DNA from: Styela clava
Lineage: Eukaryota
Assembly (NCBI RefSeq): GCF_964204865.1
Contig: NC_135250.1
Location: 14,322,001 to 14,386,000, forward strand
DNA: 64,000 nt
Direction: 5' to 3'
Positions 53,654 through 63,286 of this stretch are shown here, piece after piece. The number at the start of each line of letters is the position of its first letter. The first letter of the stretch is position 1. The notes beneath the pieces are model-generated. The model made no database searches and had not been told where the DNA came from. It saw only the letters and a program-made list of their open reading frames with translations. Both the position numbers and the translations under genes were made by a program.

Positions 53654-54268
53654 TTGTTGAGCGTCCGTAACATCCGGGGATACAGCAGTACTTTCCTCCA
53701 ACACTCCCTGCTCACTTGTATTCCATAATTAAAGATAAAACGTCCAAGTTAATACCCTGCACCTAACTGAAAACACCAGTCTACTAGCATTACTCTGGCA
53801 CTACTCCAACTGCTAATCCCCTAGTGTTGGGTGCGATGGCATTGTCAAGTGCGTCCCGAACGCTTAGCTGCCCAGCGCCATTAGCTTTTCTATTGCAAAA
53901 TATACCAAGTGCAGTTTCAAGTATTTTATGGCGTCTGAAGCTGCCGCAAAACCATGGTGGAATTCCTAAATCGTGGCCGCTATTGCCAAACCCATGGCGA
54001 CTGACTTTTTAGCTGACACAAACCAATGGTGAAATTGAAAACTAAAGGCGAATGAAATTTTTCTGCCGTTACCACGGCATGCCGGCTGTAATGGCAGGGC
54101 TGTCCCTGATAGTAAAATCTGGTACATGACTTCGTGAATATACCGGTAATAGCGCCATGACGCATGACCACGGCAAAGGCTGCCAAACTGGTTTATTCCT
54201 TATCAAACCAACGACTAATCTACTAAGCAAACTATAGAGAATTATAACCCTCTGTTGACCCTCTATAA

Positions 54269-54561: not shown

Positions 54562-55745
54562 CTCTATAATCAAACTATGCACCAAGAAAAATTTGATTAA
54601 ACACAAAAATTAATGGCATATTACCTTACATGGGTACTGTATAGATAGGACCAATGACATTTAATGTCATTGATAGGACGTTCTCGGCTCAATGTCACCA
54701 ATGGACGCTTGCGTACTGCAGTTGATTTTTGCTGGAGCGGTTTTCAAAAATTCTACTGCGTAAAACTAGCCTTAGTTAGCTTTATGTAAAGAGTAAGCGT
54801 CAAATATCCTGAAAATATATTCAGAATCATATTCGTAATAAACTAAAATCTGGTAAATGACTTTGTGAATATACGATAATAGCGCCATGACCACAGCAAG
54901 AGCTGGCATTGGTTCGTTCAGAGCCATTATATCTAATGGCTCTGATTATATAATGGCTCTTGTTCGTTCGTGACGGGAGCTGCCATGAAGTGGTAAGAAC
55001 CGCGCCTCAAATATACCGTACCGGTATGATGTTTGAGTGTTTTGCAAGTTGGCAGTTGCAAACTGGTTTATTCCTTATCAAACCAACGACTAATCTAATT
55101 ATCAAACTATGGCCGACCGTGATCAAACTACGCAACAAGAAATTATAATTAAACAAAAAAATTAGTGGCATATTACTATAGAGGGTCAACATAGAGATAC
55201 CACCTCTGTGTGACGTCATAGTTCCGCATGAGTAAAGAGGTATGACCTTCTCAGCGCTTAACTTTGCCGCCAAATATTTTGACCGAAGGTTTTTTGTTGC
55301 CCCAAGCTGCGGGCATTTTTAAGTTATTTTGTAACGCTTCGTATATATATATATATATGAGTAGATTAGCTATAAAAATCACGCTAGCTTTCGTTTCGAT
55401 ATTTATGTCACAGACTGTGAACTTGACCTAATACGGTACGATAACCTGGCACCGGTACGGTAACTGCTGAACTGACAGCAGTAGCAATAATATTATTCAG
55501 ATATTGCTATTTCATTTTCGGTAATTTTGCTTTCAGGCCCGTACCACAGTATTGTAGACAACTTAGCTCTAATCTATCTACCGGTACATATAGTTCTAAT
55601 CGTAGGTGCCGTACTTGCACAGGAATCCTTTATTTCAACTTATGTGAAGAGGGAACACAGTTTGGAGAAGCAAACCAAGTATTTGTGGTATCGATACGTG
55701 AGTATTGTTATATATATATATTAAGTGATTTAAATATTTTTTACT

Positions 55746-58700
55746 ATGCCAGCTGGAACGCATTGTGCAGTGCCGGGATGCAGCTACTCCTATGTCAAGT
55801 CTAGGAAAGCAGGACAGTCTGTAAAAACACTATTTTCTGTTCTTCGGCCCGATCTGGCAAAGACTCCTCAGGAAAGGAAACACCGGGAGGGGTTGTCCAA
55901 TTTTTTATTGGCGATGAGAGACAGTAGCAGAGGAGATAACATCAAGGCTATGCTGCACAAAGAAACGTAATGTACTTATCTAGGCATATTAAACATATAA
56001 ACAAATTTATACAGCCTATAATAGTATAATTGAGTAATTGCGTTCAAAAATTCTGCTGTGTGGATTATCAGAAACCCGGAATATTTGTTAATTTTTCTTA
56101 TCGTATATTTATCGTTATAATTTGCTAAGCCTACCAAGCCATCTAATTTGTTTTGCATTTAATTCAAATTTTGCACAAAATGACCATAGCTAGCTTTTGA
56201 CATCTTCATATTGTTATACCAATATACTTTACCTTTTTATATTTAGGGCCTCAATATGTGAAGACCATTTCCTGGGAACCGATATACTTCGGCATGGGAA
56301 AAAAAGCTCTTTAAGACTCGGAGCAGTTCCATGCAGAAAAATTCCCAGGAGTTCAGCTGTGTACCAGGAAAAAACAAGACCTCTCCCAGCTGTGCGTGAA
56401 CCACTGCCGGAAAAAATTCGATATCGATCTACTAGGAGTTTGGTCAGTGCCACTTCATACTTGTCGCAATCTATGAAAGGTATGCATCTGTAGAATTTTT
56501 TTTTGCTTGTTTAGCAAATTTTGATTGAACTTTTTATACAGATAAGTGGGCTTTGTATGAGCACCGAGGAAAATTTATTGCAGAGATGAGAAAGGATGAT
56601 TACTGCGTGCCTAGTATAAGGTAGTTGTTTTTAAACAGAAGTTATCAATTATAGTTTGGTTTTCAACTTGCAGAGAATAGGATAACATTTTAGTTTTCAA
56701 TTATTTTGTTGCTGTGTCATTTGAGTAGTAATTGAGTTTGACAGCATGAATTGTAAGTTCAGCAGTTTTTCATTGTAGCGCAAGTTTGTCGTTAGGGAAT
56801 ATTTTTAGATGGCAGAATATTAAAACTCATACTAGGAGGCTACAGGATTGTACAGAGTAAATAGCTAAGATAAATTGCAAATACCAAATCACAAATATAC
56901 CCATGAGCCATATGACATACCAAATTTTATCTAACAACTTATCAATCTAAAACAAACTGAAATAATTTTACACAATGATGAAAAAAGAGTTGAGTATGGA
57001 GAAGATGGTGCAATGCAAAGTGCTCATTTTTCTGGCTGGAAAGTCGAGATTGCAAAGCTAGGAGTTGACAGATGTGATACTCTGAATTCTGTTTTAGGTA
57101 TACATTTTCTTTTGACAAGTTCACCTTTGTTTTATTCTGTAACTCAAATTTGTGTTATCCATTTAAGACCAATTAGGCAAATTGGAGTTGTGTTGCGGTA
57201 TTGATCGGCGGGATGGCAGTACATTGGTTCACCCAGTTTTGTCGTGGGGAGGTGACAAGATTAATATCAAAAATATATATCGGTCAACATCATGTAGCAC
57301 AATTGGTATGTTAGTAAAAAATCGCTGTTCGACTGTCTCGAGAGCATATATATGATTGCAGGATATTTTTAGTGGATGTGTCAATTGGATGCCCAATGTG
57401 CAGCAGCTGCATGTCAGAACAGTTCAAAAATGACGAGGAAGAACACCATCCAAGCCAGGTCATGTTGCAAGTTGATGATACTGTGCATGATATGATCAAG
57501 GTCATGTTTACTTTTTGTTTTATTTCACGATCAAATAATTTTTAATGTACTAGACTCAAGAGATTAATTGTATGACTGACTTGTGAATATTTTCACAGGC
57601 CACTTTCGCTTCTGAAAGTTCCATCTTGAATACTTGGCAGCAAATGTTTTTTGGTCAGCAGCTTGCCAACTCCAATGCTCACCCCTCTTCACGTCGGTAC
57701 CATCCAGATGTGATTCGTTGGGCTATGGAACTCTATTGCAGATCGCCTTCTGCCTATGATCATCTGCGAACAAGTCAGGTGCTGACTCTGCCTTCCCCAA
57801 GCACTTTGAATCGCTACAGGTAAATGTAATGCTTCTGACAATTGTTGGGGTGTACTATGGTGAATTTAAATTAACTTTGATAACCATTTGGCCATGTTGT
57901 TTTCTTTCAGTCTATTCAAAAAAAATATTTTGTCTATTATCTGTCTACTTATTATATCATACATTGGTCAGTGACTCGCGATTGCTGATTTATTTTTTAT
58001 TTTTGCAGAAATGTCATTCCACCACAATCTGGGATTAACAAACTGGCATTGAAAGAAATGGAGAGAGTCATCAAAGACAAGGGTTCATTGATTGGATTTG
58101 TTGCTCTCGATGAGATGAAGGGTAAGCTCACTTTAATTTTTATTTACAATCTTACATCATTGTCATATATATGAATCTCTGATACAGTTAGAGAAAATCT
58201 GGTCTGTCGTAACGGCAAATTGATTGGTTTCGTGGACAAAGAAATGGCAAGGAATGGCAATAATGACCAGCTTGCTTCACACATTTTAGGTAAGTTGTTA
58301 CTGGGGTTTTACTACGGTAGACTTTTTATGTAACGCAGTATTAATGTTCTACATGTTTCTTCAGTATTCTACGTTAGAACCGTGAAGCGAGATCTGTCGA
58401 TTCCTTTGGCGTGGTATGCAACCCGTAACTCCCCAGCCTCCAAGCTTTGTCGGGTGTTTTGGGAACTTTTAATTGAATGTGAGAGCCGAAGCGTAAAGAT
58501 CCTTGCTGTAATCGCAGATGGTCACAGTACCAACCGTCGCTTTTTCCAACTTTTAAGTGGCAACTTGGAATTGCCTTGTGATGGTGTATTGTTTGCTCCT
58601 AATATATGCGACTCTGACAGGAACATATACCTATGTTCTGATCCATCACATTTGATCAAGGTAATAAAAGAAATGGGCAAATGGCATTGTATAATGTTTA

Positions 58701-59995
58701 CCATGATGCGTTAATTTTCAACAGTCTTTTTTTCATTTGTTCAGACTGTTCGAAACTCGTTATATGCATCAAAAGTTGGTGGGAAGAAGCATATGCGCCG
58801 AGGTGGCCAGGACATTGTGTGGAGGCATATTAAAGATCTTTATATGCAGGAATCTGTTCAGGTCCTTGGCCGTACCAGACTGAGTCCATCACATGTAGAG
58901 TTAACACCATATAGTAAGGTAAGCTAATAGTCTAATTGTGTTGGTTTGGCCGCACGACACGCTGATGAAATCCCTGAAATGGACTTATTTCAACTAAAAT
59001 TTTTGATTCGCTGCCAATGCCCTTGACTGTGGTAACAGGATTTTCAATAACTAATTTTTTTTAATACAGAGTGATTTGGGAAAATCTTTTTTATTTTCAG
59101 ATGAAAGTCAATCTTGCAACTGATGTGCTGAGCTGGAACGTCGGCCAATGTTTAAAAACAATGAATGGGACGAATGGAACTGCCAAATTTGTTTTGATGT
59201 TTGCAAAGTAAGTCGGTCATTTTTTAAAAGAAAAAAAATTCCCTATTTTTGTGTCAGTTATGCATGTATCGTCCATTCAGATGGTATGAAATTGTCAACT
59301 GTTCCTGTAATTGCCCCATACGATGCGTCGACGATGATAGACTGTCTTGGTTGAAGAATGGCTTCATAGGTTCACTGTTGGAGTGGGAAGTGAGTTGTAT
59401 TTTTTGTATGGTTTTATTCAATATGATCACAATCTCTAAAAAGATCTACAACCATAGCATTTGAAGATTATATTATATTACTATGCCATAACATTGGAAA
59501 TAAGAGATGTCATTTTGGGGTTGGCTATTGTTATTTTCATGCATTATTTATTCTTGAAAACAATTATAGAATGAGCATGGTGGAGATGAAAAGAGTTTTC
59601 TGGCTCGCCCAACCTTAGAGGGACTGAAATTCACCACACACAATTTCATAGAGATGTGCAAATACCTTCTGGCAAATGGTTTGGAATATGTGTCTTTGCA
59701 CTGCTTTAATCAGGATGTTTTGGAAGCTTTCTTCGGAAATTTGGTGAGATTTTTTGGGGGGGCTGAACTGTATGGGTATCTATCTAGCCATGTATATATC
59801 TAATCCGCAGCATCACATTCATAGAGACAACTTGGATCTAGATCAAGCAATCCAGACATATCTCAAGTATCCTATGGAATAACCCAAATTTCGCAAAGAA
59901 AGATCATCAAGAAGGTCAAAGGTGGTAATACAACCTATGGGAAAGCGAATGCCTGGACAGACATATGTGAACATCCATTGCCATCAAAAAAATGA
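55746..59995 (+). CDS. P-element/THAP9-family transposase, 15 exons, ~791 aa, no stops or frameshifts in the model
   Basis: Exons: 55746-55966, 56247-56479, 56542-56620, 56988-57097 (weak acceptor), 57168-57305, 57373-57500, 57599-57819, 58009-58121, 58188-58289, 58365-58660, 58745-58918, 59101-59207, 59281-59389, 59570-59743, 59825-59995 (2376 nt). THAP C2CH (CAVPGC...CEDHF..GAVP), HTH (RYHPDVIRW..SPSAYDHLR..LPSPSTL), catalytic ALDEMK, IADG and NQDVLEAFFGNLRQ, D(2)H motif DPSHLIKTVRN, and the insertion-domain motif KMKVNLA. Confidence 0.92.
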
Positions 59996-60662
59996 ACATT
60001 AGCATAATTTCGGCTGCAATCATGACTTACGATATTTAGAACTTGCAGATTATGCTTTTTCTCTTATAATATCGTGGATTGTTGCCGTAAAATCAATATT
60101 GGTCTTTTGTTCGAAACATTTGACCATACACACAAGGCTTTGGAGTCGGAAGTCCAACATTTTTTTATATCGTAGCTGTGCGCAAAATTTGGTTGAATTA
60201 ATCAGAGTCAAATTTTTATCGTAATATTCCATTCAAATTTATCTAAAAAACTAAGCATTGAATTGACTAGAGTATTTTCAATAGATAATTAAATTCAGTA
60301 AGACTCAATAAAGTTTTTGTAAAAGTTTGGTTTGTTGTAGCCTGTTTCGAACTCTTCGTCAAATTTGAATTATGGTCTAAATTAACTGGACTTCACAGCC
60401 TGCTCGGAAACTTATTAGTGCTGTTTTATAAATAGCATGGCAATCAAATAACAAGTTTGGATGGCAGAAGATTAAAGTGGATGATGCAGTTTATTGCCTG
60501 GTGTATTTGAGACTTTGTGTATTTTAGTCGAATCAAATTTAATTGGGTGCTTTTTGTTTGGTACATAAGAGAAACACTGAGATAACCCGGCCCACACAAT
60601 AATTAAACAATAGACTCAATCAAGTACCTCAAGCTTTTTATTTTAGCAGTTACTAAAAAAAA

Positions 60663-61589
60663 TTAATTGAAAATATGACTGTTGCTGATTCTTGCCAAAT
60701 CTGGTCTAGTACCTCTAGAACAGACACCAGACCCCGGGGCCCTCTTTTTGAATAATTTGTAAAACAACTTTCTTGCATATGCATGTGAAAGCACTCTTAT
60801 AAATAAACTCGTTACATATCTTGCTATCTTGACACTTTCTTTTTGTCCATTGCAATAGGGTAGCATGTCATTGACATTGGTATCAAAGTTTTGAGACTCT
60901 TCTAACTTATTTTCAATTCCTGCAAAGTCTATAAGATGTGGCTGTTTAGCACATTCCTGCGCTACTTTTTGGTAAGCCTCTTCTAATAGTAACAAGTATG
61001 CTTGAGTTGGATACTTTAGCTTTCCCTCCGGGAACTGCAGTAATGGGATTGTTGAATGGGAGGGCCTTTTTGCACAGAGGGAGTCCAGGGCTTTTGCTGA
61101 TTCTGCAAATTTAATATACCCCTTTTTCAGGGTATATCCTGCAATGTACTCAATTATGCCTTTTTCATAACTGTCGACCTGTTCGCAAAATAAATTCTTC
61201 GGGGTGGCAAATGTTACATTGTCATCCAGTGGCTTGAGAATGTAGTTGGTTATTTCCAACATGGCTTTCGCTGTAAAAATTTTTTCCGTATGCCCAGCGA
61301 ACATCTTTGGCGAGAGGTGTGAGCATTGAGAGAATTTTAGCATGACTTGGTCAGCTCCTTTCTCTCTGGCAAAGACTTGCATGAGGGCTTTTATAATATT
61401 CAAGCCTTCAAATGTTAGCTCTAAGTCGGATCTTACGTTATTGACCAATTTTATAACTTGATCATCGGAAACTTCCGGAGTTCTTCTATTTTTTACTTGT
61501 GTTGATGCTTTCGAATGAGGAAATTCTTCGATTTTATCGAAATCCTCAAAAAGGAACTCAACAATTCCATGTATCTCGTTAGTAGCCAT
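60663..61589 (-). CDS. Intronless 308-aa accessory ORF inside the P element; C-terminal half resembles the P/THAP9 transposase C-terminal domain
   Basis: Longest ORF in the window, ATG to stop, lying within the TIRs. Contains EKGIIEYIAGYTLKK...GKLKYPT..YLLLLEEAY...YVTSLFIRVLSHAYARK. Confidence 0.85.
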   Translation of the reverse strand: MATNEIHGIVEFLFEDFDKIEEFPHSKASTQVKNRRTPEVSDDQVIKLVNNVRSDLELTFEGLNIIKALMQVFAREKGADQVMLKFSQCSHLSPKMFAGHTEKIFTAKAMLEITNYILKPLDDNVTFATPKNLFCEQVDSYEKGIIEYIAGYTLKKGYIKFAESAKALDSLCAKRPSHSTIPLLQFPEGKLKYPTQAYLLLLEEAYQKVAQECAKQPHLIDFAGIENKLEESQNFDTNVNDMLPYCNGQKESVKIARYVTSLFIRVLSHAYARKLFYKLFKKRAPGSGVCSRGTRPDLARISNSHIFN

Positions 61590-63286
61590 TACAGATGAAT
61601 AACAGTAAGTAAGATAACTTATAAGTTACTGAGTAATAAACTAGAGCTAGGCTGGGTATGTGAAAAATAATTAATTACAGAGATTGTGCAAATTGACAAT
61701 CTAAACGTGGTAATGCTTTTGACTTTTAATTAATCAACACTCCTTTTTTTTCTCACTAATTAGGCTATGTGGCTGATTTCAGACAGATAACGGTTTCAGC
61801 ATCGATTTAGTATGAGAATAAATGGTAAGATAGCAGTCCAATAAAAATAGAGTAAAATACAGTGGTTTTCAATCACAGAGGCCAATACAATATTGATAGT
61901 ATACAGTAAAGAAACATATTTATTAATTCTGAAAGCAAACTACCGAATCATGACCCTGAACTGATGGATTGGCTGGATACAAACCCGCGACATCTTGACA
62001 CCAAACGGCCAACGCTGAAATAGATCGCGCTGAGGAAAACATCGCATTTCCTACTTCCGTACCTCTTTACTCATGTGGAACGACCTTTGAACCCGCGAGT
62101 GAATTCTCTATTATCATTCTCTGTGATATTACATTACCTTACATGGGTATAGGACGTTCTCCGTTCAACGTCACCAAAGGACGCTTCCGTCGGGAACAAA
62201 TTGCCTTACCGGTACTGCAGTTGATTTTTGCTGGAGCGGTTTTCAAAAATTCTTATGCGGAAAACTAGCCTCAGTTAGCTTTATGTAAAGAGCAAGCGTT
62301 CAAATAAATTCTGAAAATATATATAGAATCATATTTACCATAGAATCATATTCGTGAAAAAAAATATCAGTGATAATCCACAAAAGATATGAATAGGCGG
62401 TACCGGTACCGTATCACCAATGAACATGAAGAGAAATTTAAAATGAGAGCGAGATCTGAATGCTTTGATACCGTAACAGTGTACTTACGTCTGTACGTAG
62501 TTTAGTGTAGTCTACTTGTTGTGTAAGTCTGAAAATTTTCAAATTTTTTGTGTTAGTACTGTGCTGGTAAATTGAATTGTTTTGCCTACCGGTACCCATA
62601 CTGCCATATGATGATTTGTAGTGAGAATATTTCGATGATATGATGCTGGTATTTCTCACTGTAATGTGGTACTAGTAGTAGTTTTGAACATGTATAACTG
62701 CCCAGTGTTGGACCTAGCGCCACTTCTTCTCAAATATGGTATGTTTTGATACCTGGATACCTGTACAGTAAACTTATACAGTATTTCTACTGTCATTTGC
62801 TATTGTCATTTTTTTATGTAACTATTGTACATTCGTGATTTCAATAATAACTTGAAAATTTGATAATCCTAACCAACTGGATAATATGTAGCCTATTCAA
62901 ATGAATTGGATACTACTGACTGACTGATGCAAAATCCATGGAACATACAGATACGGTATATGATAATGATGCTAATTATATTAGGTGGTCACAATTAATG
63001 TAATTGGATGAATATTGTTTCTTTGTTTCAACACATAATGAAAAAGGGAATTTAAGAGTAAGCTGTCACTGTCTGAGGAAAGGGATGTGTTTTGAAATAG
63101 TTGAGTGTGCAAACATCACTTCTCATATGTTTTCTCGAGTTGAATTGTACCAAATAGGAATAGAACTAGAATTTATATTAGATCATCAATTCATATTGTT
63201 ATTTGACCAAATAATCTATTAATTCAGATCTTATTAATCATTGTTATATTTGCTACTGTGTCTGTAAAATCTCCTACAGTCCTAGG

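What the first reader, a model, noticed from the sequence alone, without database searches (positions are those of the whole stretch)
55177..62125. Two-gene P element: transposase core and its YIAGY C-terminal domain appear split into separate convergent genes
Seen: the spliced transposase is intact but ends ~60 aa after the catalytic E (QDVLEAFFG...GGNT...HPLPSKK*), and a separate intact 308-aa ORF faces it on the opposite strand inside the same TIRs. Known: Drosophila P transposase and THAP9 continue past the GN motif into a helical C-terminal domain with a Y(I/V)AG(Y/F)...L..P(S/T) signature. Seen: that signature (EYIAGYTLKK...GKLKYPT...LFIRVLSHAYARK) is absent from the transposase and present in ORF2, behind a ~140-aa N-terminal region I cannot assign. 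Inference: this is a bipartite P-superfamily system in which ORF2 supplies the domain in trans as a required cofactor or regulator. I cannot tell whether repeat databases already list such elements.
Basis: partly seen in the sequence, partly recalled or inferred. Interest (0 to 1): 0.92.

Follow-up and report, generated by a model that had tools for sequence, protein, structure and literature searches.

The report
Two-gene P transposon, C-terminal domain split off
This young jumping gene of the P-element kind makes its transposase in two pieces from two facing genes, the second carrying the DNA-contacting end domain that all known P transposases have fused on, which gives a natural test of what that domain does.

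Summary
Window 55177-62125 is a complete 6,949-bp P-superfamily transposon with a 7-bp target duplication. There are four full-length copies at 99-100% identity in this 377-Mb genome.

Gene 1 (+ strand, about 13 exons, stop at 59993-59995) has THAP, HTH, RNase H and GTP-binding-insertion parts. It ends about 20 residues after the KGGN motif, inside what is the linker of canonical P transposases.

Gene 2 (60663-61589, - strand, intronless, 308 aa) has no Pfam hit of its own. Three results tie its residues 136-282 to the P transposase C-terminal domain (CTD):
- Its family profile hits the Drosophila CTD (PDB 6p5a_B, E 5e-4).
- Three of ten relatives tested singly pass Pfam's cut-off for PF12596.
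- Its AlphaFold model matches 6p5a_B as the best of 48,161 chains (Z 9.7, 2.6 Å, 114 of 118 residues).

At least three further diverged lineages in the genome keep the same truncated transposase tail. All face a convergent ORF2. An intronless canonical P family in the same genome has the CTD fused.

That ORF2 acts in trans as a transposase subunit is inferred, not shown. RNA data and cross-species context could not be obtained. I found no published two-gene P element. I rate it a new variant of a known kind.

The parts
55170..55176 (.). left copy of the 7-bp target-site duplication ATATTAC
   Evidence: a single ATATTAC stands in the unfilled paralogous site 54595-54631
55177..55242 (+). 5' end: imperfect terminal repeat (TATAGAGGG...) plus the 22-nt subterminal inverted repeat at 55221-55242
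   Evidence: (I3, 95% complementary)
55746..59995 (+). Transposase gene, about 13 exons, roughly 710 aa, lacking the C-terminal domain. Provisional exons: 55746-55966, 56247-56479, 56542-56613, 57168-57313, 57599-57819, 58009-58121, 58188-58289, 58365-58660, 58745-58918, 59101-59207, 59281-59389, 59570-59743, 59825-59995.
   Evidence: open blocks; Pfam per exon; conservation in lineages B and C; in-frame GT-AG junctions. The exons were never joined for any search or fold.
57599..57819 (+). exon coding the P-type HTH DNA-binding domain
   Evidence: PF12017, 29 bits, cut-off 23
58365..58660 (+). exon coding the second half of RNase H N with the ADGHSTN motif (second catalytic D)
   Evidence: PF21787, 30.2 bits, cut-off 24.6
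59570..59743 (+). exon ending in QDVLEAFFGNL (catalytic E)
   Evidence: (aligns to NQDIVEHFFGSM of 6p5a_A)
59825..59995 (+). last exon: RQLGSRSSNPD...KGGNTT...PLPSKK and the stop; the conserved short basic tail
   Evidence: 62-66% identical, with the stop within a few codons of the same place, in lineages B, C and the C6 copy; 34% identical in lineage D
59996..60662 (.). 667-bp spacer between the two convergent stop codons, with AATAAA-type signals on both strands
   Evidence: the spacer is 647 bp in lineage D
60663..61589 (-). ORF2, intronless, 308 aa
60735..61184 (-). ORF2 residues 136-285: homologue of the P transposase C-terminal domain (YIAGY helix, G-L-x-YP, long basic last helix)
61230..61472 (-). 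ORF2 residues 40-120: family-specific four-helix N-terminal domain, pLDDT about 90, unassigned
62060..62125 (-). 3' end: 22-nt subterminal repeat at 62060-62081 and imperfect terminal repeat ending ...CTCTGTG
62126..62132 (.). right copy of the target-site duplication ATATTAC

Best explanation
This is a recently active P-superfamily DNA transposon whose transposase is coded in two pieces.

Shown: gene 1 makes a THAP-HTH-RNase H/GTP-binding core that stops within the linker region of canonical P transposases. Gene 2, on the opposite strand and facing gene 1, makes a 308-aa protein. Its C-terminal half is a homologue of the P transposase C-terminal domain (CTD). Its N-terminal half is a helical domain special to this family. 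The arrangement is kept in several diverged lineages of this genome.

Inferred: the two proteins assemble on the element's ends. The ORF2 CTD takes the place seen in the Drosophila strand-transfer complex, between the RNase H domain of one subunit and the GTP-binding domain of the other, touching transposon and target DNA. The N-terminal domain replaces the lost covalent linker as a tether or dimeriser. Transposition would then need both gene products.
For: Homology of ORF2 to the CTD:
- The profile of 23 family members hits 6p5a_B (Drosophila P transposase residues 617 onward) at E 5e-4, across EYIAGY...GxLxxPS.
- 15 of 23 members touch PF12596 at E up to 10 (best 1e-5). Of ten members scanned singly, three pass its cut-off and four more score E 6.5e-4 to 1.7e-3.
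- The AlphaFold model (pLDDT 80.6) matches 6p5a_B at Z 9.7, rmsd 2.6 Å, 114 of 118 residues. That is rank 1 of 48,161 chains and the only Z of 8 or more; the next is 7.2.
- The same profile aligns to residues 640-716 of a canonical 813-aa P-like transposase of this genome, where Pfam places THAP9_C.

The split:
- The transposase stop follows ...PLPSKK, and the tail is conserved in lineages B, C, the C6 copy and D.
- No + strand match to the ORF2 profile lies within the element.
- Convergent pairs are seen at C4:13.24M, C5:4.11M and C18:4.78M, and partial ones at C18:12.63M and C19:15.77M.
- ORF2 is about 26% identical between lineages A and B. Their transposase exons are 37-66% identical, and there is almost no DNA similarity outside coding blocks.

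Activity: four full-length copies at 99-100% and at least four identical ORF2 copies; a target duplication and an unfilled paralogous site.

Plausibility of action in trans: in the solved complex the CTD is joined by a flexible, disordered linker, sits against another subunit and contacts DNA (review PMC7776569). It is deposited as a separate chain.
Against:
- No binding evidence: the complex prediction of ORF2 with the last transposase exon gave no verdict.
- The window's own ORF2 has no Pfam hit. Sequence similarity to the CTD is confined to about 55 residues. Z 9.7 for an all-helical domain would be only moderate on its own.
- dN/dS among family-A ORF2 copies is 0.32-0.57 with only one nominal p = 0.02, and 0.74 (not significant) in family B.
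- The genomic context of the 29 database relatives could not be read, so pairing is shown in one genome only.
- Two splice junctions of the transposase model are weak.
Confidence: 0.62

Rival explanations
1. ORF2 is a regulator rather than a subunit. As a free CTD-like protein it would damp or time transposition, for example by competing for DNA or for the docking site, or through antisense or double-stranded RNA from convergent transcription. The truncated transposase would be catalytically sufficient on its own.
For: P elements are known to make truncated protein repressors (66-kDa protein; PMC7776569). The two genes converge with only 667 bp between their stops and have poly(A)-type signals on both strands. 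Deletion derivatives that keep ORF2 but lack the transposase are common.
Against: The known repressors keep the THAP DNA-binding end, not the CTD. In the solved complex the CTD makes many contacts with transposon and target DNA, so a core without it would be expected to need a substitute. The truncation and ORF2 are kept together in several diverged lineages.
Confidence: 0.2
2. The element is not autonomous. Its truncated transposase is defective, and copies are moved by the canonical P-like transposase of the same genome, which has a fused CTD. ORF2 would be a leftover.
For: Intact intronless 813-834-aa canonical P-like genes exist at five or more loci.
Against: The canonical protein shows little or no significant similarity to the lineage-A exons; the one short match is 18 residues (E 0.002) at the catalytic motif. 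A shared end-recognition is therefore unlikely. The short tail with its stop is conserved at 62-66% identity across lineages that share almost no DNA similarity, which argues for selection on this form. ORF2 is an intact, conserved family.
Confidence: 0.08
3. ORF2 is a passenger or host-derived gene with no role in transposition, and its likeness to the CTD is convergent helical packing.
For: The window's ORF2 has no Pfam hit. The N-terminal half is unassigned. Helical domains often give middling Z scores (note).
Against: Sequence profile and structure each point, separately, to the same PDB chain. Several relatives pass Pfam's own cut-off. The position and orientation inside the element are kept across lineages. 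All 29 relatives are about 100-330 aa and none is a larger host protein.
Confidence: 0.05

Closest known systems
Drosophila P element and its 87-kDa transposase (PDB 6P5A/6PE2)
   Same: THAP, HTH, RNase H split by a GTP-binding-type insertion, and the catalytic motifs. There are short terminal plus subterminal inverted repeats, introns in the transposase gene, and a CTD with a YIAGY helix and a basic last helix.
   Different: In P the CTD is residues 566-751 of the same polypeptide. Here it is the C-terminal half of a separate, oppositely oriented, intronless gene with an extra N-terminal domain. The target duplication is 7 bp instead of 8, and the terminal repeats are much less perfect.
THAP9 and canonical P-like elements, including the intronless 813-834-aa family in this same genome (L026, L028)
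   Same: The same domain order up to RNase H C. The fused C-terminal domain (PF22824) carries the same KYIAGF...GGLTVPS signature that aligns to ORF2.
   Different: They are a single gene with the CTD fused after a linker of about 55 residues. The split lineage stops inside that linker.
PIF/Harbinger and ISL2EU two-gene DNA transposons
   Same: These are cut-and-paste elements that carry a second gene besides the DDE transposase. In Harbinger the second protein is needed for transposition (established knowledge, not tested here).
   Different: Their second proteins (Myb/SANT-like; an exonuclease) are not pieces of the transposase. Here the second gene codes a domain that the rest of the superfamily has inside the transposase.
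Galileo and 1360/Hoppel (P superfamily)
   Same: A 7-bp target duplication. Lineage B of the split group has terminal repeats of about 715 bp, Galileo-like.
   Different: As far as I know and could find, they are described with a single transposase gene.
66-kDa and KP truncated P proteins
   Same: They are transposase forms without the C-terminal part.
   Different: They also lack part of the catalytic domain and act as repressors. Here the whole catalytic core is kept and only the CTD is moved to another gene.

Membership tests
P superfamily of DNA transposons | N-terminal THAP zinc finger (C2CH) | tested here: inconclusive
   CxxC lies in exon 1 (MPAGTHCAVPGC) and C...H with AVP in exon 2. 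Pfam THAP matches only exon 2, at E 0.062, because an intron splits the domain.
P superfamily of DNA transposons | P-type HTH domain (PF12017) | tested here: met
   29 bits against a cut-off of 23 on exon 57587-57820
P superfamily of DNA transposons | RNase H fold with D, D, E, interrupted by the GTP-binding insertion domain | tested here: met
   PF21787 scores 30.2 bits (cut-off 24.6). The GBD matches are weak per exon (E 0.006-0.06). The motifs LDEMK, ADGHSTN and QDVLEAFFG are present. In lineage D, where one exon holds the core, all three Pfam models pass their cut-offs.
P superfamily of DNA transposons | 7-8-bp target-site duplication and terminal inverted repeats | tested here: met
   7-bp ATATTAC; imperfect terminal repeats plus a 22-nt subterminal repeat
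P superfamily of DNA transposons | C-terminal domain as part of the transposase polypeptide | tested here: not met
   The stop at 59993-59995 comes about 20 residues after KGGN. There is no + strand CTD in the element. This is the point of difference, not a reason to exclude the element from the superfamily.
P transposase C-terminal domain (Pfam PF12596 / PF22824; 6p5a chain B) | sequence match to the family model | tested here: inconclusive
   The window's ORF2 has no hit. Relatives P0005, P0006 and P0012 score 26.5, 24.8 and 23.3 bits against a cut-off of 22.6, and four more reach E 6.5e-4 to 1.7e-3. The family profile against 6p5a_B gives E 5e-4.
P transposase C-terminal domain (Pfam PF12596 / PF22824; 6p5a chain B) | all-helical fold of the CTD | tested here: met
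   Z 9.7, rmsd 2.6 Å, 114 of 118 residues, model residues 136-282. It is rank 1 of 48,161 chains and the next Z is 7.2.
P transposase C-terminal domain (Pfam PF12596 / PF22824; 6p5a chain B) | contacts with transposon and target DNA inside the transpososome | not testable with these tools
   This needs a complex structure or biochemistry. The one complex prediction gave no verdict.
Two-component DNA transposons (second protein required) | second gene product needed for transposition | not testable with these tools
   needs an excision/integration assay with and without ORF2

The most novel reading that the evidence does not exclude
A whole lineage of animal P elements works with a naturally split transposase. 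The DNA-contacting C-terminal domain is an obligate, separately expressed subunit, held on by a new N-terminal docking domain. Transposition would then be gated by two promoters and by subunit stoichiometry, and deletion derivatives that keep only ORF2 would act as helpers or sinks.
Probability: 0.5. Interest if true: 0.75.

Novelty: new variant of a known kind. Interest (0 to 1): 0.66.

Why it matters
- The role of the P/THAP9 C-terminal domain is poorly understood. One paper calls the human THAP9 C-terminal region uncharacterised (PMC10824691).
- A natural system in which that domain is a separate protein allows clean add-back experiments, such as core alone, core plus ORF2, ORF2 without its N-domain, and a re-fused protein. 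A fused transposase does not allow these.
- It adds P to the short list of eukaryotic cut-and-paste superfamilies with a second element-coded protein. It would be an unusual case in which the second gene is a detached piece of the transposase itself.
- A two-part transposase could also be a useful design for controllable gene transfer.

Tried and rejected
- Pfam on ORF2 itself: no family, even at E 10.
- ESM Atlas on the whole protein and on residues 30-130: nothing usable.
- Word-indexed homologue search, single sequence and profile: none, or only one known member.
- Foldseek against the PDB: no hit at E 0.001 or better. 6p5a_B came only at rank 46, though with the highest probability in the list. 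The match became clear only with VIA-align.
- Complex prediction of ORF2 with the 56-aa last transposase exon: no verdict, so it is evidence neither way.
- The listing of cluster members gave no names or accessions.
- A Pfam PF12596 six-frame search of the genome found nothing, not even the canonical fused copies. That blank means nothing.
- dN/dS within families has little power.
- The spliced transposase was never joined. All searches were exon by exon by reference, so no fold or complex of the full transposase was attempted.
- Rejected: the idea that the in-frame stops at 58172, 58331 and 58712 mark a pseudogene. They lie inside short GT-AG introns with good consensus.
- Rejected: the idea that the N-terminal half of ORF2 matches another part of the P transposase. 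No such match appeared.
Full report
**What is at the coordinates.** The window is AT-rich (about 35% G+C) eukaryotic DNA from a 377-Mb assembly. The stretch 55177-62125 behaves as one mobile unit.
- A DNA search of the genome finds four copies covering all 6,949 bp at 99-100% identity, plus some fifteen deleted, interrupted or older copies.
- In nine other copies the similarity stops exactly after ...ATTCTCTGTG (window 62125), and the flanks then all differ.
- In the window ATATTAC stands on both sides (55170-55176 and 62126-62132).
- A paralogous copy of the surrounding host repeat at 54595-54631 shows the site without the element and with one ATATTAC.
- The ends are imperfect inverted repeats (TATAGAG... 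and CACAGAG...). A 22-nt inverted repeat, 95% complementary, lies 44 bp inside each end (I3).

**Gene 1, the transposase.**
- Open blocks on the + strand, searched one by one by reference, match Pfam's P-transposase models:
  - THAP, weak because an intron splits it.
  - Tnp_P_element HTH, 29 bits against a cut-off of 23.
  - RNase H N, 30.2 bits against 24.6.
  - The GTP-binding insertion domain, E 0.006-0.06 on two exons.
  - RNase H C, weak.
- The catalytic motifs LDEMK, ADGHSTN and QDVLEAFFG are present.
- The blocks are also the only parts conserved (37-66% amino-acid identity) in two diverged relatives in the same genome, which share almost no DNA similarity with this element.
- Every pair of neighbouring blocks can be joined in frame by a GT-AG intron. 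Most junctions have good consensus; two (56614/57167 and 57314/57598) have weak donors.
- This gives a provisional 13-exon gene of about 710 codons.
The model has no RNA support.

**Where gene 1 ends.**
- The last exon reads RQLGSRSSNPD...KGGNTT...EHPLPSKK, then a stop at 59993-59995.
- That is 62 residues after the catalytic E and about 20 after the KGGN motif.
- In the Drosophila protein the matching motif (NQDIVEHFFGSMRSRG) lies at 527-541 of the 569-residue chain A of 6P5A.
- In a canonical 813-aa P-like protein of this same genome, the matching stretch (NNNPTVQQF...KGTGGN) is followed by about 55 more residues. Then comes KYIAGFVAKRL, the start of the C-terminal domain.
- The split lineage therefore stops inside the linker.

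**Gene 2, ORF2.**
- A 308-codon open frame runs on the - strand from 61589 to 60663. It has no intron, and purines at -3 and +4 of the ATG.
- At least four copies are identical, and others are 90-96% identical.
- It has no Pfam hit.
- A full HMMER search of 1.84 billion representative proteins finds 29 relatives, 24-53% identical. All are between 106 and 331 aa and none is transposase-sized.
- Their alignment (A1) shows two conserved regions. One is an N-terminal region. The other is a C-terminal region with E-Y-(I/L)-(A/G)-G-(Y/F)-x-L-K-K, G-x-L-x-Y-P-S and L-F-I-R-V-L-S-x-x-F-A-K-K-L-F...G-L-R-x-x-L-K.
- The relatives are at most 39-54% identical to any paralogue I hold from this genome. They are at most 52% identical to one another, apart from three same-cluster pairs at 91-99.7%. 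So this is an old, thinly spread family.

**Is ORF2 the missing domain?** Three separate lines of evidence agree.
- *Pfam:* 15 of 23 family members touch PF12596 (Tnp_P_element_C) at E up to 10 (best 1e-5). Of ten members scanned singly, three pass its curated cut-off (26.5, 24.8 and 23.3 bits against 22.6). Four more score E 6.5e-4 to 1.7e-3.
- *Solved structures by sequence:* the family profile searched against all PDB sequences finds the Drosophila P transposase C-terminal chain 6p5a_B at E 5e-4. The alignment runs across ...EYIAGYVIKK...GGLIKPSEKF....
- *Fold:* an AlphaFold2 model built on A1 (mean pLDDT 80.6; residues 40-120 and 136-285 mostly above 90) was aligned to 48,161 representative PDB chains.
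  - The best match, and the only one with Z of 8 or more, is 6p5a_B residues 617-734. It has Z 9.7, rmsd 2.6 Å, 114 of 118 residues aligned, model residues 136-282.
  - The next Z is 7.2 (the same top hit).
  - Plain Foldseek ranked this chain only 46th. On its own, Z 9.7 for a helical domain would be moderate. It counts because it covers the whole target domain, stands apart from the rest, and names the chain that the sequence profile had already found.
- The same profile also aligns to residues 640-716 of the canonical P-like protein of this genome (hhalign E 2.4e-4), where Pfam places THAP9_C.
- The N-terminal domain of ORF2 (about residues 40-120, four helices) has no convincing relative: Z of 6 or less, and Atlas blank.

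**Is the split a conserved design or an accident of one family?** Other lineages in the genome show the same plan.
- *Lineage B* (C4:13.24M, full length about 7 kb, terminal repeats of about 715 bp that are 96% alike) and *lineage C* (C5:4.11M) each have the transposase exons on one strand. An ORF2 relative converges on it from the other strand.
- A further copy at C6:21.19M keeps the same short transposase tail and an ORF2-like piece, but there both lie on the same strand.
- *Lineage D* (C18:4.78M, L041) has the catalytic core in one 387-codon exon that passes all three Pfam cut-offs.
  - It ends ...NPDIQLYGQFHQIISAKKGLKAIKGSN... and stops about 50 residues after FFGHVR.
  - It faces an ORF2-like frame of 290 codons, 647 bp away.
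- In B, C, the C6 copy and D the transposase stops within a few codons of the same place.
- The last exon is 62-66% identical between A and B, C or the C6 copy, among the best-kept exons of the gene.
- Lineage-A exons are 34-44% identical to lineage D, but barely alignable to the canonical family. D is 26% identical to the canonical family. The split lineages therefore group together, which fits a single old origin.
- ORF2 evolves faster than the transposase: about 26% identity between A and B, against 37-66% for the transposase exons.

**Selection.** Within families the signal is weak. dN/dS of ORF2 between family-A copies is 0.32-0.57, with one comparison at p = 0.02. It is 0.74 (not significant) in family B. 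This is expected if most differences arose after insertion. The case for constraint rests on intact frames and conserved motifs across lineages and database relatives.

**How it most likely works.**
- In the Drosophila strand-transfer complex the C-terminal domain is joined to RNase H by a flexible, disordered linker.
- It makes many contacts with transposon and target DNA, with a basic end pointing at the target (PMC7776569). It is even deposited as its own chain.
- A domain that already works across subunits on a floppy tether is one that can be detached. The ORF2 model ends in a long helix and a basic tail, as the Drosophila domain does.
- I therefore propose that the core and ORF2 assemble on the ends, and that ORF2 supplies the DNA-contacting domain. 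Its N-terminal domain would give the attachment that the covalent linker once gave.
- This is inference. The one complex prediction allowed (ORF2 with the last exon) gave no verdict.
- The origin could be an inversion of the last exon, or a nested reversed P fragment. I cannot tell which.

**Rivals.**
- ORF2 could be a regulator rather than a subunit (0.2).
- The element could be defective and moved by the canonical family (0.08).
- ORF2 could be an unrelated passenger (0.05).
- The reasons against each are in the Rival explanations section.

**Comparison with what is known.**
- The element belongs to the P superfamily by its HTH, RNase H/GBD core, catalytic motifs and 7-bp duplication. It fails one usual feature, the fused C-terminal domain.
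- In seven full-text searches I found no description of a P-type element with a second gene or a detached C-terminal domain.
- Repbase and the 2009 paper on Ciona P elements (recalled from memory) are outside the library. Prior description in a repeat database cannot be excluded.
- The nearest working analogy is the two-gene Harbinger or ISL2EU plan. There, however, the second protein is not a piece of the transposase.

**Earlier notes of this scan.**
- A first-stage note (s1-810839) reports the same idea on another piece of this genome, so the scan has met this design before on other DNA.
- Another agent's note (s1-822915) calls the genome the sea squirt Styela clava. I did not check that.

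**Limits.** Pairing is shown in one genome only. There is no RNA evidence, no binding evidence and no assay.

**Verdict.** The function in trans is plausible but untested (about 0.6). It is a new variant of a known kind. Interest 0.66.

Noticed in passing
window 54233-54267: A 35-bp piece made of a 3'-type end (TATAGAGAATTATAA) and an inverted 5'-type end (...CCCTCTGTTGACCCTCTATA) of the same P family, 909 bp upstream of the full element. It may be an excision footprint or a minimal remnant. I saw no clear target duplication around it.
   Followed up: partly
G000:C4:13243569-13250564 (L015/L019), C9:8.24M (L013/L017), C18:12.63M (L014/L018): Lineage B of the split P group has terminal inverted repeats of about 715 bp, 96% alike, Galileo-like. 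Two deletion derivatives keep an intact ORF2 (311 and 295 aa). The only full-length copy seen has a stop in ORF2.
   Followed up: partly
3' flanks of ten family-A copies (window 62126 onward; L002-L009, L012): The first seven flanking bases fit RTNNNAC in six of ten copies (ATATTAC, GTTTCAC, ATATCAC, GTTTGAC, GTACAAC, GTGAAAC). This suggests a target-site preference.
   Followed up: no
L026, L028, L029 (G000:C9:2.46M, C6:11.27M, C13:4.85M): An intronless canonical P-like family with open frames of 813-834 aa and a fused THAP9_C domain lives in the same genome as the intron-rich split lineage.
   Followed up: partly
window 54595-54631 against 55148-55176 plus 62126-62150: The element sits inside another repeat, and a second copy of that repeat nearby gives the unfilled site. 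The filled site has five extra bases (ATTAC) after the right duplication.
   Followed up: no
G000:C2:474113-474469, C1:15898831-15899139, C17:14.25M and 14.30M: Further open ORF2-like frames (221-284 codons) with no P-type RNase H match listed nearby. They could be solo copies, derivatives or domesticated genes. The DNA could not be fetched.
   Followed up: no
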